Below, in pieces: positions 18,148 to 29,311 of a stretch of 39,287 bases of DNA. The notes under the pieces are model-generated. The model ran no database searches. It had not been told where the DNA came from and worked only from the letters and a program-made list of their open reading frames with translations. Position numbers and translations under genes: made by a program. This DNA is from Octopus sinensis. Taxonomy: Eukaryota. The DNA is taken from assembly GCF_006345805.1 (NCBI RefSeq), contig NW_021835526.1, positions 1 to 39,287 of the forward strand, given 5' to 3'. The first letter of the stretch is position 1; each line of letters starts with the position of its first letter.

Positions 18148-18157
18148 GTTGTTGTTG

Positions 18158-18237
<80 letters not shown>

Positions 18238-18250
18238 GTTATTATTATTA

Positions 18251-18416
18251 GCAGTATTTCGCCCGTCGCTATGTTATGAGTTTAAATTCCGCCGAGGTCA
18301 ATTTACCTTCCAACTTTCAGGGTCGATAAAATAAGCATCAGTTGAAAACTGGGGTCGATGTGATCGACTCGTCTCCTCCCCCAAAGTTGCTGCCCTTGTG
18401 GAAAAATTTGAAAACA
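18251..18416 (+). mobile_element. Meta/MESC-like SINE, plus orientation, between (TTA)n tracts
   Basis: AAATTCCGCCGAGGTC...GGGTCGATAAAATAAG...GGGGTCGAT. Confidence 0.75.
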
Positions 18417-18427
18417 TTATTATTATT

Positions 18428-18642
18428 CTATGTTTGACTTTTGCTTTACATTTGTAAAAGTTGGCTTCAAGTCTCACCCAGAGACCTCAAGCGATAAGTT
18501 GGAAGTTCATGTTGGTGTTATGCCTAGGGTGCCATATATTTGGTTTTGTACTTAGTGTTGTACTAATGAATGTCTAAAAATCCATACGAAAATTATGTTT
18601 GCTTTAAAACTTGAGATTACATAGAAAGTATTTTGCGTAGGT
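18428..18642 (-). mobile_element. R4/Dong-type retrotransposon 3' end, subfamily A
   Basis: Same 3' UTR as 25213, 26371 and 28371 (GAGGTCTCTGGGTGAGACTTG...); (AAT)n tail. Confidence 0.85.
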
Positions 18643-18643
18643 A

Positions 18644-18706
<63 letters not shown>

Positions 18707-18710
18707 TATT

Positions 18711-20143
18711 GCTTTTGCATAGCTTTTAACACTGAAGATGTACTACAGTATCAGCTGTTCACTACAAGTGCATTACGGTGACACCTCATATTTTTCGAGC
18801 ACCTTCCGGAGCATTCGGGTGTGTCAATCAGTGCTGTTTTCTGCAAGTGCCCACCCTTATTGCAGCCCCTATTTGTTCCACGCACTTCTTGAGATTTTTA
18901 CTCACTGTTCCCAGGGTTCCGACAATTATTGGTCTACTGCTACCTTTTTCATCGACCACAACTGCTTAACTTCCCAGCTAACCTGTCATATCTCTCCGAT
19001 CTTCTTTCTTCCTTATCGCATAGCTTGTGAGCTGGGCATGCTATATCTATCATCCAGCATAGTTTGCTTTCTGTCTCAAGACTATGTCCAGCTTCCTATT
19101 CTCTATCTCATGGTCGCACTGAATCATAAAATCCCATAGGATCTTTGCATTTCTATTTTCGACCATACCTTCAGGTTTGTGGTCGTACCAATTTTTTTCT
19201 CTTTCAAGTCCCATACTTGTTGCAAAGTGTCCAATGGACAAGCCTTGCTACATTGTGGCGTCTCTTATATTTCTTCTGGGCTAGTGGCGTACATTTGCTG
19301 ATAATATGCCATATGGTTCCACCATTTTGTCCACAAATTCTGCACTTATCACTTTCTGCTGTGTTGTCTAATCTGTATTTTATGTAGTTAGCTCTTAGTG
19401 CTTGCTCTTGGGCAGCACATATTAGAACCTCTGTTTCCGGTTTTAAATCACTTTTAGACATCCACAGACATCTGTTTTCTCTGTTGTCTTGTCTTCATCA
19501 TCACTATGAAATTGATCATGCATTCTCTTCTTTACTCACCTATTTTCAGTTTCATTCGTTTTCAATTCCTTGTATAGTGCTTTATCTTTGCAATCTTTCA
19601 TTCTACACAAGCCTGACCTTCTTACGTCTAATAATAGCAGTTCTGTGGCATTTTTGCATACCATGCTATGTTGTTTTCTTCTGTTCTAATGCTGTGTTCG
19701 CATCCAGTAAGTCCTCTTCCCCTTCTTTTTCTTGGTACATACAGTTTGTCTGTGTCAGTTTTTGGGTGCATTGTCCCATATCTAGTCAGCAACTTCTTTG
19801 CCTTTCTGTCTAAGCTGTTTGGTCGTCTACTGTCCATGCGCTTACCCCTGCTCCATATCTAAGGAGTGAAACCGCCCAGGTGTTGATCGCTTCGATCTTA
19901 TTCCGTCCATTTCATTTCGATTTTAAGATCAGTCTCAGTCTGCGCAAGTATTCCACATAAATTTTTCTGTCATTTCTTTCTCCGACAATTTATCCATTTC
20001 CATAATTCCCAAGTACTTATAGCTTGTCTCTTCTATCTGCTTAATAATCTCCCCCGACGGTATCGATAGCCCGTCCATTCATTTGATTTTGCCTCTCTTC
20101 AACTCTAACCCACCACACTGTCTCAGTCCGAACTCCATTCTGT
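18711..20143 (-). mobile_element. 5'-truncated R4/Dong-type retrotransposon, subfamily B (RT end, CCHC finger, RLE)
   Basis: YKYLG, AINTWAVSLLRYGAG, LYVPRKR.GRGL, LKPETEVLICAAQEQAL, CRICGQNGGTIWHIISKC, ILWDFMIQCDHEIENRKLDIV; (AAT)n tail; several frameshifts. Confidence 0.92.
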
Positions 20144-20421
20144 CTTCTTCTTCTTCTTCTTCTTCTTCTTCTTCTTCTTCTTCTTCTTCTTCTTCTTCTT
20201 CTTCTTCTTCTTCTTCTTCTTCTTCTTCTTCTTCTTCTTCTTCTTCTTCTTCTTCTTCTTCTTCTTCTTCTTCTTCTTCTTCTTCTTCTTCTCTCTTCTT
20301 CTTCTCTTCTTCTCTTCTTCTTTTCTTCTTCTTCTTTCTTCTTCTTCTTCTTTCTTCTTCTTCTTATTATTATTATTATTATTATTATTATATTATTATT
20401 ATTATTAATATTATTATTATT
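20144..20421. repeat. (TTC)n tract grading into (TTA)n
   Basis: Direct reading. Confidence 0.95.
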
Positions 20422-20540
20422 GAGTGAGAGAGCAGTGCATGCCATCAAGTGACACTGAGGTATAAATATACGAAGCCCAATATACCCATCATGACTACCT
20501 GTCAGATAAGGTTACACCAGGCACATGCATCACAACCATA
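20422..20540 (-). mobile_element. Partial copy of the ~540-bp non-coding (TAA)n-flanked element ('X')
   Basis: Matches 23048-23160; strand inferred from co-orientation with neighbouring tails. Confidence 0.8.

Positions 20541-26279: not shown

Positions 26280-26281
<2 letters not shown>
26060..26281 (+). other. Inverted two-piece duplication of the neighbouring Dong copy
   Basis: 26060-26191 = reverse complement of 27286-27418; 26188-26281 = reverse complement of 26878-26971; AAAC overlap at the join. Confidence 0.9.
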
Positions 26282-26370
<89 letters not shown>

Positions 26371-26371
<1 letters not shown>

Positions 26372-27668
26372 GTTTGGCTTTTTTTGTATTTGTATAAGTT
26401 GACTCCAAGTCTCACCCAGAGACGTCAAGAGACAACAAGTTAGAAGCTCATGTTGGTGTTTTGCCTAGGGTGTCATATATTTGGTGTTGTACATATTATG
26501 CTCTAGAGAATGCTTAAGAAAATATGAGAAAACTATGATGTTGTTTTAAAATTTGAGATTAAATAGAAAGCCTTTTACGTAGGATATGAGTAGTTCCCAT
26601 GAGCACTATCTTTTGAATTTCTGCCATTTTGGGGTTTCATGGTATGTGAGATAGGCAGGAATCAGCCATTTTTGCTATCATTCCTAGGGCACCTATGACA
26701 ACAAGTATTGTTTTGTCTTGAAGTTCTAAATGTTTCCAATTTCTATTTAAAGATCTTTATACTTGCTCAGTTTGGGGTAGGTCTTGACAGATACATTTAT
26801 GTCGATTGGCACAGTAATATCAACGGGGAGACATGTCTTTGCTCAAAGTCTTTCAATATAATCTGTGGCCTATTCACATCTGTCTTTCTGTCAGTTTGAA
26901 TGGTGAATTCCCAGAGGAGCGACATGTGATCATTTTCAAGCACTGAGGGTGATTCGTGTTCCCACTAGTTTTTTTTATAGGGCAGGTCCAGTTTTTTGCA
27001 AAGTACCCAGTGAATATATTGTGCTGTTCTATTATGCCTGTTGAGATACTCTGTAGGCAGAAGAAGACTGTACATGGAGACAATATGATCAATGGTTTCA
27101 TTTTGTTGTTGACATAGAGGACTTGTTGGGCTATTGCCGTTCTTTAATATGTTGGCCTGGTAGTCCCTTGTAGATAGGCACTGATCTTCGGCTGCTTTGA
27201 TAAACCCTTCTGCTTTTGATTTTAAGCCAGAAGAAACTAACCACTGATGGGTAAGGACTCTGTCAGCATCGGCACTATTAGCTCTGTTTGGGTATTTGCT
27301 ATTGAGAGGTTTTTCTTGCCATTTATCAGTAAGAATATCTAAATCAGCAGTTTTAGCACGAGTTTTCATACGCTTAGCTTTTCCTGTGCTTGTTTCCAGT
27401 ACGTCTAATTTTGGAATTTGTTGGATTTGGAATTCAGTTAGATATTCCTTTGCCTGTTTTGCTACTGAGTATGATGCTTTCTTGTTTTCATATTTTGAGA
27501 CAAGTTTTAGAATCCAGTCATCAGAGATTTTCAGGTAGGTGTTTAGACCAATTGTGGCAATCTTCATTGTTAATTCCAGTTGTAAAAGTCCACAGCCACC
27601 CTTTTTCATGGCTGGTAAAGTCGCTCTGTAACTGCCTGAGGGTGGTGCATTCTATTCATTTTCAACAA
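26371..27668 (-). mobile_element. 5'-truncated R4/Dong-type retrotransposon, subfamily A, long copy
   Basis: MHHP...RLY...GG.GLLQLE, HQWLVSSGLKSKAEGFIKAAEDQ, LCQQQNETIDHIVSM, YIHWVLCK, LLWEFTIQTDRK, KLSKYKDL; (AAT)n tail. Confidence 0.92.
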
Positions 27669-27760
<92 letters not shown>

Positions 27761-28288
27761 GAGTGGAAGAGCAATGCATGCCATCAAAGTAACACCGTAG
27801 TACAAATATACGAGACCCAATATACACTCTATGTCTGATGTCCGATAAGAGTACACCAGGCTCATGCAGTACATCTATATGTACGCAAGATAAACAGCGT
27901 AACCTTGCAGGTGGAGTCCACTTTGAATTTTCTCCAGGTCGAGTAGCCTATCTTGGTCCAAAGGTCTCTGAATAAGGTGATTTTAAGGTGGATGAATGAA
28001 ACACTCATGTTTCTGTGGGTAAAGTATTTAAGCCTCAAAGAATACCTCTCCTCACATAGCAACCATGCTCCGTTACTACTCCTGCTCGGATCAGAGATGC
28101 ACAAATCGTCAGCCATTAAGGGACAACATGCTCAGCTAATTAAGATCCTGTAACTGATAAGCAAATCTGTGGTATTAAACAGAATAATTGCTGGAGCCCA
28201 TCTTTTATACCAAGACAAAACATATACATGATAACACTTTCAATCAGTTAAGATCAGAAGCCACGTGAGCCACCGCCTGTTGCTGCAT
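27761..28288 (-). mobile_element. Element X, diverged full-length copy
   Basis: GAGTGGAAGAGCAATGCATGCC...GAGCCACCGCCTGTTGCTGCAT between (TTA)n tracts. Confidence 0.85.
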
Positions 28289-28323
28289 TTATTATTATTA
28301 TTATTATTATTATATTATTATTA

Positions 28324-28370
<47 letters not shown>

Positions 28371-28371
<1 letters not shown>

Positions 28372-28567
28372 GTTTAACTTTTGCTTTACTTTTGCACAAG
28401 CTGGCTCCAAGTCTCACCCAGAGACCTCAAGGGACAACAAGTTGGAAGTTCGTGTTGGTGTTATGCCTAGGGTGCCATATATTTGGTTTTGTACTTTGTG
28501 TTGTACTAGTGAATGTCTAAAAAAACCATACGAAAATTGTTTGTTTTAAAACTTGAGATTACATAGA
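28371..28567 (-). mobile_element. R4/Dong-type 3' end, subfamily A
   Basis: Matches 18428-18625. Confidence 0.88.
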
Positions 28568-28637
<70 letters not shown>

Positions 28638-29311
28638 TCGTTATCATCATCATCGTTCGACACTTGATAGATTCAAATAAGCTTCTACAGCATTACGTGT
28701 TTCACCACAGCGTACGTTGGTTGCGGGTTATAAGTTAACATCTCAGAGGTAACTTTTTGCAAATTTTGGTGATCACTATTCAAAATGCACTGTGGTTATT
28801 TAGAATCATTATGTAATGTCTCTGAATAATGTCCGGCTACATATAAATGCGTCATATTTCTTTAAATCACCCATTCTCCGTCTTATATAATTACCCTGGA
28901 AATCTTTACTTTCATTCCGAGGCAAATTAATTCCTTCAAACAGTTATACCCTTTGGTTTAGAGCACGGGATTTAAGCGAAATTTTATCGGCATTTTAATA
29001 TATACCTGTTTATTCATCCTATTTATCAGAAATCTTGGTGCACCACCTGTATCTTTAATGAAATTGTCAGAATTTCATACAGGTCAATTTTCTAGATATT
29101 TATGTTAGAGATAGCAAAGTTTTGTGTACACGATTTCGTTTACTGCATCTGTATTGAATCATTCTTGTAAGTGAAATGCTCGATATTACAGAACTAGTTA
29201 AGGCAATGTGTCTGAAATAAAAAGACGTTTGCATAAGGATTAACGTACTCAGTATTTTGAGGTAGAGAATATGTTAATGACCTAATCCAATTTAGTACCG
29301 AGTGCTATGTG

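What the first reader, a model, noticed from the sequence alone, without database searches (positions are those of the whole stretch)
18155..28640. Self-feeding array of 13 co-oriented insertions in (TAA)n from about five R4/Dong subfamilies plus a passenger element
Seen: nine RLE retrotransposon pieces (subfamilies A x4, B, C, D, E x2) and four X copies, almost all separated by triplet tracts that read TTA on the plus strand. Every coding piece is on the minus strand except one local inversion. Known: Dong elements of the R4 clade insert site-specifically in (TAA)n by target-primed reverse transcription, which fixes orientation. Inferred: each insertion leaves more target, creating a 10-kb sink shared by several coexisting lineages. 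This is a microsatellite-based niche with its own hyperparasite.
Basis: partly seen in the sequence, partly recalled or inferred. Interest (0 to 1): 0.75.

Follow-up and report, generated by a model that had tools for sequence, protein, structure and literature searches.

The report
Dong-type LINE pile-up in (TAA)n
One (TAA)n microsatellite in an octopus-like genome has been hit about a dozen times, always in the same direction, by five old families of a known microsatellite-targeting jumping gene and by a short non-coding hitch-hiker; it is a clear but largely expected example of a known behaviour.

Summary
Window 18161-28636 carries 13 (TTA)n tracts on the + strand and none in the TAA reading. 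Between them lie remnants of five deeply diverged LINE families (A x4, B, C, D, E x2). Each encodes a CCHC knuckle plus a restriction-like endonuclease (RLE), and all are sense on the minus strand.

Corrections:
- "X copy 1" is family C's own 3' UTR. X (three copies, about 530 bp, non-coding) shares only its last ~120 nt with C. The count is therefore 12 insertions, not 13.
- C is 5'-complete but has lost ~1.9 kb internally.
- The single plus-strand coding piece is a 99% inverted copy of two bits of neighbour A3, not an independent insertion.
- An unrelated SINE piece lies on the opposite strand.

The best explanation is repeated target-primed insertion of (TAA)n-specific Dong/R4-type elements, plus a tail-sharing parasite. 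Four of eight relatives' loci from other assemblies show the same co-oriented, TAA-spaced clusters.

"Self-feeding" is plausible but not proven; its support is that the tracts are uniform at about 26 repeats. R4-clade placement by RT phylogeny was not testable. Verdict: a new member of a known kind, of modest interest.

The parts
18161..18250 (-). (TAA)30 tract at the 3'-most (left) edge of the array, preceded by (TTG)5 and unique DNA
   Evidence: TRF; sequence
18251..18415 (+). 5'-truncated dispersed SINE-like piece in the opposite orientation. It is unrelated to the Dong pieces and is followed by (ATT)4.
   Evidence: Five more copies in the window at 75-83% identity, all on the minus strand; no RLE homology
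18428..18643 (-). A1: family A, 3' UTR only (216 bp)
   Evidence: 79-90% identical to the other A 3' ends; junctions
18711..20137 (-). B: family B, 5'-truncated within the end of the RT; carries CCHC and a decayed RLE
   Evidence: tblastn; frame translations
20138..20421 (-). (GAA)76 followed (in minus-strand sense order, preceded) by (TAA)19, lying between C's 3' end and B's 5' end
   Evidence: TRF
20422..22711 (-). C: family C, 5'-complete but with an internal deletion of about 1.9 kb (junction 21867..21851). It comprises a 5' UTR, the N-terminal KW..E.Y..AFYTA region (22100-21867), then the end of the RT, CCHC, RLE and 3' UTR. Many stop codons. The last 119 bp (20422-20540) is the stretch shared with X.
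   Evidence: N-terminal ORF of the shrimp element L003 matches 22100-21867 (46% aa, E 1e-15) and its RT aa 266-321 match 21851-21684; L001 N-terminus also matches; translation; alignment
22712..23047 (-). Composite triplet tract: TTA runs interrupted by TCA/TCC/TTC-type degenerate triplets
   Evidence: TRF; alignment to D's 3' flank shows only low-complexity similarity
23048..23580 (-). X2: full-length copy of the non-coding passenger X (533 bp)
   Evidence: no protein hits; no Rfam or tRNA hit
23680..24239 (-). D: family D, 5'-truncated after the CCHC knuckle; RLE remnant. Its 3' end is followed by degenerate GAT/GAG triplets (23629-23679), then (TAA)n.
   Evidence: tblastn
24324..24714 (-). 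E1: family E, RLE C-terminal end plus 3' UTR
   Evidence: junctions
24824..25142 (-). E2: family E, 97% identical to E1, with the same 3' end and a different, shorter 5' truncation point
25212..25564 (-). A2: family A, last ~50 codons plus 3' UTR
25622..26060 (-). X3: X copy lacking its first ~90 nt
   Evidence: 86% identical to X2
26060..26279 (+). Inverted duplicate of two bits of the neighbouring A3 (27418..27286, then 26971..26880), 99% identical. It joins X3's 5' end to the (TAA)30 tail of A3.
   Evidence: blastn; the only plus-strand coding hit in the region
26370..27668 (-). A3: family A, longest A copy. It runs from the end of the RT through CCHC, RLE and 3' UTR. The 214-aa ORF at 26965-27609 is the best preserved coding piece.
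27761..28288 (-). X4: full-length X (528 bp). Its 5' end lies within ~12 nt of X2's.
28370..28567 (-). A4: family A, 3' UTR only (198 bp); the 5'-most element of the array
28568..28636 (-). (TAA)23 upstream of the 5'-most element. It is not the tail of any element, so it is residual target, and it is followed by unique DNA.
   Evidence: TRF; sequence

Best explanation
A (TAA)n microsatellite (TAA on the minus strand) in an octopod genome has been used at least 12 times as the landing site of (TAA)n-specific LINEs. These LINEs encode a restriction-like endonuclease and are of the Dong/R4 kind. Nine insertions come from five anciently diverged families (A x4, B, C, D, E x2). Three come from X, a ~530-bp non-coding element that carries the last ~120 nt of family C's 3' UTR and is presumably recognised and copied by C-type protein.

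Each insertion is explained by target-primed reverse transcription. The endonuclease nicks the TTA strand at a fixed position in the repeat. In all five families the tract after the element starts in the AAT phase. The 3' end of the element RNA is then copied from that nick, which forces the element's sense strand onto the TAA strand. Reverse transcription usually stops early, giving 5' truncation at different points.

Every copy ends up followed by its own tract of about 20-36 TAA units. That tract is again a target, so the locus grows as a head-to-tail pile.

The one plus-strand piece is best read as an accident of second-strand synthesis during the X3 insertion. The upstream (TAA)30 3' end folded back, copied two bits of its own strand (A3), and then switched to the X cDNA.

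Shown: the anatomy, orientation, junctions, family relationships, tail sharing, and recurrence in other genomes. Inferred: the biochemical steps, mobilisation of X by C, tail regeneration, and the fold-back event.
For: Tracts and strand.

Families and truncation points.

Strand of all coding remnants.

Element type: CCHC plus RPD..D..K endonuclease in the homologues. A profile of these hits solved R2 retrotransposon proteins over both motifs (9nl3, 9dou, E about 1e-4). RVT_1 and zf-RVT are found in full-length relatives.

Divergence: 19-42% amino-acid identity between families.

X and C: they share only the terminal ~120 nt, at 77-92% identity. X has no protein, tRNA or Rfam match.

C structure: it retains the N-terminal domain and has lost ~1.9 kb.

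Inverted piece: 99% identical to A3, and its order of segments fits fold-back copying.

Tract lengths: uniform, CV 0.22 against 0.93 expected for random splitting, P < 1e-5.

Residual target: (TAA)23 lies upstream of the 5'-most element.

Other assemblies: 7 of 8 relatives' loci have (TAA)n on the sense strand and none has (TTA)n. L001, L006, L007 and L008 hold 8, 2, 4-5 and 3 co-oriented copies spaced by (TAA)n, and all 13 or so neighbours are co-oriented.

Literature:
- Dong RNA is cut out of a (TAA)n co-transcript by a 5' ribozyme, and 5' junctions are then set by microhomology (PMC3774820).
- Octopus vulgaris has 5 recently active Dong-R4 families with 1129 insertions (PMC13282606).
Against: - No RT phylogeny against reference Dong, R4, HERO or NeSL sequences could be made, and some HERO and NeSL-related families also target microsatellites (PMC4640811).
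- No HDV-like ribozyme was detected at C's or X's 5' end, nor in relatives, by Rfam.
- One relative (Clytia, L002) has no TAA nearby and one (L005) is followed by a TA/TG repeat.
- All copies here are old and broken, so no activity is shown.
- The uniform tract length could reflect microsatellite length equilibrium rather than a tail brought in by each insertion.
- X's status as a discrete unit rests on only two copies with nearly coincident 5' ends.
Confidence: 0.8

Rival explanations
1. Much of the array arose by unequal crossing-over or replication slippage between neighbouring (TAA)n tracts, which would duplicate blocks, rather than by independent insertions.
For: E1 and E2 are adjacent and 97% identical. 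The right half of the array reads A2-X3-A3-X4-A4, an alternating pattern. The 99% inverted duplicate shows that local DNA-level rearrangement did occur.
Against: Copies of one family have different 5' truncation points, each ending exactly at a tract. A copies are only 79-90% identical and X copies 73-87%. Five unrelated families cannot arise by duplication. Every copy keeps the exact family-specific 3' end.
Confidence: 0.1
2. The TAA tracts are only the elements' own 3' tails, as with the TAA-tailed I factor, and the elements have no target specificity. On this view the cluster reflects regional preference or chance.
For: Every tract can formally be read as the tail of the element upstream of it on the minus strand. 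Tract lengths are uniform.
Against: - All 12 insertions lie in tracts, and none lies inside another element's 9 kb of body.
- All 12 are co-oriented (p = 2^-12).
- The 5'-most element is preceded by a (TAA)23 that belongs to no element.
- Single relatives L004 and L003 have TAA on both sides.
- No copies occur in the other 28.8 kb of the window.
Confidence: 0.04
3. The array is an assembly artefact: reads from many separate Dong-in-TAA loci were chained together through the shared (TTA)n.
For: Repeats joined by identical simple tracts are a classic cause of chimeric contigs. No read data are available here.
Against: Tracts are short (53-107 bp apart from one degenerate composite), so long reads and many paired short reads would span them. 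The inverted piece is 99% identical to its immediate neighbour A3, which argues for true adjacency. Arrays of the same design occur in independent multi-megabase contigs from other assemblies.
Confidence: 0.05

Closest known systems
Dong (Bombyx mori) and DongAg / DongBg, (TAA)n-specific LINEs of the R4 clade
   Same: Restriction-like endonuclease C-terminal to the RT, with a CCHC knuckle. Insertion in (TAA)n with fixed orientation. No N-terminal zinc fingers seen in full-length relatives. A mollusc member (DongBg) is already known (PMC3812793, PMC7998251). Dong-R4 is abundant in octopus, with five recently active families (PMC13282606).
   Different: Only C-terminal and N-terminal remnants are present here. 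RT-based clade placement was not done. No 5' ribozyme was detected. Five very divergent families are seen side by side in one tract together with a non-coding dependent element, and I found no description of that in the searchable literature.
R2 / R1 in rDNA and TRAS / SART in telomeric repeats: site-specific LINEs that accumulate head-to-tail in a repeated target (TRAS/SART from my own knowledge)
   Same: Target-primed insertion into a tandemly repeated, dispensable target. Fixed orientation. Many 5'-truncated copies. Several lineages share one target. The endonuclease and CCHC motifs align to solved R2 proteins.
   Different: The target is a 3-bp microsatellite, so every repeat unit is a potential site and each insertion is again followed by target. 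There is no host gene transcription unit such as rDNA to ride on.
SINE-LINE pairs that share a 3' tail, and bipartite or internally deleted non-autonomous LINEs (reported for RTE, Ingi and R2 in PMC5786205; R2 'SIDE' elements from my own knowledge)
   Same: X carries the terminal ~120 nt of LINE family C and shows the same target and orientation. The C copy itself is a 5'+3' internally deleted element.
   Different: X has no recognisable pol III head (no tRNA, 5S or 7SL hit), and its 5' 410 nt match nothing in the window. PMC5786205 lists R4 among ribozyme-bearing clades but not among those known to generate bipartite non-autonomous elements.

Membership tests
Dong / R4 clade of RLE-encoding LINEs | Restriction-like (PD-(D/E)XK) endonuclease C-terminal to the RT, preceded by a CCHC zinc knuckle | tested here: met
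   C..C..H..C followed by RPD..D..K is seen in A3, C, D, E and in the homologues. A profile of homologues aligns both motifs to solved R2 proteins 9nl3 and 9dou. There is a weak zf-RVT hit.
Dong / R4 clade of RLE-encoding LINEs | Reverse transcriptase domain in the same ORF | tested here: met
   The end of the RT is present in B (20137-19650) and A3 (27660-27451) by tblastn. Full RVT_1 (E 2e-30) is found in relatives that share 60-70% identity with C.
Dong / R4 clade of RLE-encoding LINEs | Site-specific insertion in (TAA)n with the element sense strand on the TAA strand | tested here: met
   12 of 12 insertions here. In 7 of 8 relatives' loci TAA lies on the sense strand and there is never TTA.
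Dong / R4 clade of RLE-encoding LINEs | No N-terminal zinc fingers; a diverged Myb/SANT-like N-terminal domain (PMC7998251) | tested here: inconclusive
   Pfam finds no zinc finger and no Myb in the N-terminal ORFs of L001, L003 and L004. A conserved KW..EEY..AFYTA motif is shared with window C. A profile of it finds no Myb structure in the PDB.
Dong / R4 clade of RLE-encoding LINEs | HDV-like self-cleaving ribozyme at the 5' end (PMC3774820) | tested here: inconclusive
   There is no Rfam hit at C's 5' end (22711 downwards), in X, or at the 5' ends of relatives. Rfam's models are narrow, and the window copy is decayed. L004, L005 and L008 share a conserved 5' UTR that was not analysed further.
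Dong / R4 clade of RLE-encoding LINEs | RT phylogeny groups the element with Dong/R4 rather than with HERO, NeSL, R2 or CRE | not testable with these tools
   No reference sequences of these clades could be fetched. The window holds almost no RT sequence. Some HERO and NeSL-related families also target microsatellites (PMC4640811).
SINE / non-autonomous partner of a LINE (element X) | 3' end shared with the partner LINE | tested here: met
   The last ~120 nt of X2, X3 and X4 are 77-92% identical to the last 119 nt of C. Nothing is shared upstream of that.
SINE / non-autonomous partner of a LINE (element X) | Small-RNA-derived head with a pol III promoter (tRNA, 5S, 7SL, snRNA) | tested here: not met
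   No ARAGORN gene and no Rfam match even at E <= 10. X is therefore not filed as a classical SINE.
SINE / non-autonomous partner of a LINE (element X) | Discrete unit length and no coding capacity | tested here: inconclusive
   The 5' ends of X2 and X4 lie within ~12 nt of each other and abut (TAA)n. There are no tblastn hits in X. With only two full copies, a long 3' UTR of an unseen family is not excluded.

The most novel reading that the evidence does not exclude
X would be a so-far undescribed class of microsatellite-specific non-autonomous retroposon that parasitises an R4-clade LINE by carrying its 3' tail. The (TAA)n arrays would then be self-reinforcing in two ways. Each insertion regenerates about 26 repeats of target. 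Because Dong-type elements lack promoters and are cut out of co-transcripts, each insertion also joins a co-oriented read-through unit from which downstream copies can be expressed. On this reading, five lineages that diverged long ago persist together in this single sequence niche.
Probability: 0.2. Interest if true: 0.5.

Novelty: new member of a known kind. Interest (0 to 1): 0.3.

Why it matters
The locus is a compact natural record of how a target-specific LINE uses a microsatellite. It offers twelve junction pairs from five families for inferring the cleavage phase, the spectrum of 5' truncation, one internally deleted copy, one aberrant second-strand event, and a tail-sharing dependent element.

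For genome annotation, it shows that long 'simple repeat plus LINE/Dong-R4' blocks in cephalopod assemblies are real, ordered structures. It also shows that part of the 'unknown' repeat content (X) may be Dong-dependent.

It does not change what is known about how Dong-type elements work.

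Tried and rejected
- An exact-sequence look-up of the 214-aa A3 ORF found no contig. The best database relatives of family A are only 46-52% identical, so no same-species Dong loci could be fetched.
- Rfam at gathering and at E <= 10 on the window gave nothing meaningful. The same was true for seven related loci, where the only hits were microsatellite artefacts. No HDV-like ribozyme and no SINE head were found. 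ARAGORN found no tRNA-like sequence.
- RNAalifold on the shared C/X 3' tail predicts a fold, but with no compensatory changes, so it is no evidence for a recognition structure.
- A possible extra mini-copy of D inside the composite tract 22712-23047 was rejected, because the similarity is only between degenerate GAT/GAG/TAA triplets.
- A Myb-like N-terminal domain could not be confirmed by Pfam or by a PDB profile search.
- The octopus LINE paper's supplements hold RepeatMasker tables but no Dong sequence. The original Dong paper is not held. Literature searches found no description of multi-family Dong arrays or of Dong-tailed non-autonomous elements. This is absence in the searchable library only.
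- I ran no further search on clade naming, because source names for such proteins are almost all 'uncharacterized'.
- X as an internally deleted C was rejected, because its 5' 410 nt do not match C's 5' region.

Full report
**What is there**

The window is AT-rich and full of microsatellites. Between 18161 and 28636, TRF lists 13 triplet tracts in the TTA phase. A regular-expression scan finds 27 perfect runs of at least four units in the whole window. All read TTA on the + strand and none reads TAA. The stretches between the tracts were compared all against all. They were also compared with database proteins found from the best preserved ORF, which is 214 aa at 26965-27609 on the minus strand.

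**The coding pieces**

The homologues are C-terminal fragments of retrotransposon ORFs. They carry a C..C..H..C knuckle followed by RPD..D..K. A profile of ten of them hits solved R2 retrotransposon proteins (9nl3, 9dou; E about 1e-4), and both motifs align. The pieces are therefore LINEs with a restriction-like endonuclease (RLE).

tblastn puts every hit in the region on the minus strand, except 26189-26275. Measured against a 362-aa homologue, the pieces are:

| Piece | Window coordinates | Extent |
|---|---|---|
| B | 18711-20137 | from the end of the RT |
| C | 20422-22711 | see below |
| D | ~23680-24239 | from just after the knuckle |
| E1 | 24324-24714 | RLE C-terminal end and 3' UTR |
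| E2 | 24824-25142 | as E1, shorter at the 5' end |
| A2 | 25212-25564 | last ~50 codons and 3' UTR |
| A3 | 26370-27668 | end of RT through 3' UTR |
| A1 | 18428-18643 | 3' UTR only |
| A4 | 28370-28567 | 3' UTR only |

Pairwise amino-acid identity between A, B, C, D and E is 19-42%. They are old, separate families rather than subfamilies. All are riddled with stop codons.

1. The first 'X copy' (20422-20540) has no TTA spacer on its C side and is simply the end of C's 3' UTR. X2, X3 and X4 share exactly this ~120 nt with C, at 77-92% identity, and nothing further upstream. There are therefore three X insertions and 12 insertions in all. This also identifies X as a non-coding element with a LINE-derived tail.
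2. C is not 5'-truncated. The N-terminal ORF of a full-length relative from Penaeus indicus (L003) matches 22100-21867 (46% aa, E 1e-15). Its RT residues 266-321 match 21851-21684 (also L001). C therefore keeps its 5' UTR and N-terminal domain, which contains the motif KW..E.Y..AFYTA, and has lost about 1.9 kb in between.
3. The plus-strand piece 26060-26279 is 99% identical to two bits of the neighbouring A3 (27418..27286 and 26971..26880). Read on the minus strand, the order is A3, (TAA)30, +26880..26971, +27286..27418, then 5'-truncated X3. That order is what fold-back self-priming of the upstream (TAA)30 3' end would give, followed by a switch to the X cDNA. It is a rearrangement and not an opposite-strand insertion, so the orientation rule has no exception.
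4. The stretch 18251-18415 is a dispersed SINE-like piece on the + strand. It has five other copies in the window. It is unrelated to the array's logic and is the only opposite-strand insert.

**Is it more than chance?**

- Twelve of twelve insertions have their sense strand on the TAA strand (p = 2^-12).
- All landed in tracts, and none landed in the ~9 kb of element bodies.
- No A-E or X sequence exists in the other 28.8 kb of the window.
- Members of one family end at the same 3' nucleotide but start at different 5' points, each abutting the repeat directly.
- In all five families the tract after the element begins in the AAT phase. This points to one cleavage position within the repeat unit.
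- The 5'-most element (A4) is preceded by a (TAA)23 that is nobody's tail, and then by unique DNA. The repeat is therefore a target, not merely a tail.

**Related loci**

Exact look-ups of homologues returned eight loci from at least four other assemblies. Seven have (TAA)n on the element's sense strand, and none has (TTA)n. Four hold several co-oriented copies spaced by (TAA)n: L001 has 8, L007 has 4-5, L008 has 3 and L006 has 2. All 13 or so neighbours are co-oriented. The shrimp element sits inside 3.7 kb plus 1.3 kb of TAA-rich sequence. One Clytia copy has no TAA nearby, and one element is followed by a TA/TG repeat. The window's array is thus a large example of a general pattern.

**Comparison with what is known**

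- Dong is the (TAA)n-specific member of the R4 clade, with a snail representative (PMC3812793).
- Dong RNA is released from a (TAA)n co-transcript by a 5' HDV-like ribozyme. 5' junctions of elements processed in this way are set by microhomology (PMC3774820).
- Octopus vulgaris has five recently active Dong-R4 families with 1129 insertions (PMC13282606).
- The window is from an octopod. The only homologues of another element in it are from O. bimaculoides and O. vulgaris, and several of its repeats match an O. vulgaris locus at about 80%.

The RLE, RT and target features of Dong are met. The zinc-finger, Myb and ribozyme features are inconclusive. RT phylogeny could not be done, and other RLE clades also contain microsatellite-specific families (PMC4640811). 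I therefore call the elements Dong-type with good but not complete support.

**'Self-feeding'**

The twelve simple tracts are strikingly uniform: mean 77 bp, CV 0.22, against 0.93 for random splitting of one tract (P < 1e-5). They are also similar in size to tracts in the other assemblies. This fits each insertion being followed by its own tract of about 26 repeats. It also fits length equilibrium of the microsatellite after insertion. The idea is plausible and not proven.

**X**

X is about 530 bp and non-coding, with no pol III-type head. It has two full copies whose 5' ends nearly coincide, and it carries the C tail. It behaves as a dependent passenger of the C lineage. A 2018 survey lists RTE, Ingi and R2, but not R4, as sources of bipartite non-autonomous LINEs (PMC5786205). 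X and the internally deleted C copy may therefore be a small addition to that list. RNAalifold gives no covariation for the shared tail.

**Verdict**

The finding is a new member of a known kind, and interest is modest (0.3). The most novel element is the Dong-tailed passenger.

Noticed in passing
window 295-573 and 626-1185 (+), with (TACA)n tracts at 177-294, 373-466, 574-625 and 1186-1339: Two co-oriented copies (78% identical) of a second, distant RLE-type LINE. An RLE-coding remnant lies at 609-908, and each copy is bounded by (TACA)n/(ACAT)n. This looks like a parallel small pile-up in a different microsatellite. The only database homologues are Octopus bimaculoides and O. vulgaris proteins (73-74%). 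The O. vulgaris copy (L009 6150-6590) follows (CCAT)n(CATA)3 but is not followed by a long ACAT tract.
   Followed up: partly
window 20138-20365; also 22963-22985, 22850-22930 and 23629-23679: A (TTC)76 tract sits between B's 5' end and the (TTA)19 behind C. Shorter TTC and TCA/TCC-rich degenerate triplet blocks interrupt two other tracts. Their origin is not resolved; they could be mutated and expanded TAA repeats or additions at 5' junctions.
   Followed up: partly
window 20696-21484 and 21975-22227 versus L003 10111-10896 and 7324-7572: Family C and a Penaeus indicus element share 67-68% nucleotide identity over about 1 kb, and 62-70% amino-acid identity. This is high for a mollusc against a crustacean. 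It could mean strong constraint or horizontal transfer.
   Followed up: no
L004 7335-7450, L005 7285-7400, L008 6925-7040: Three full-length relatives share a well conserved 5' UTR that starts just after the upstream (TAA)n. It is a candidate for the 5' self-cleaving ribozyme known from Dong, but Rfam does not detect it.
   Followed up: partly
window 18251-18415 (+); 1682-1986, 13200-13317 and 33622-33911 (-): A dispersed SINE-like repeat with six copies in the window at 75-83% identity, including a 184-bp tandem pair at 1621-1983. One copy lies inside the TAA array on the opposite strand.
   Followed up: partly
window 7819-7893: A solitary (ATT)25, the same strand and size as the tracts of the array, has no Dong or X piece beside it. 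It is an unoccupied potential target 10 kb away.
   Followed up: partly
window 15588-15977, 32274-32702, 38123-38502: Three copies of a ~400-bp repeat that also occurs several times in the O. vulgaris locus L009 at 76-81% identity. It was not classified.
   Followed up: no
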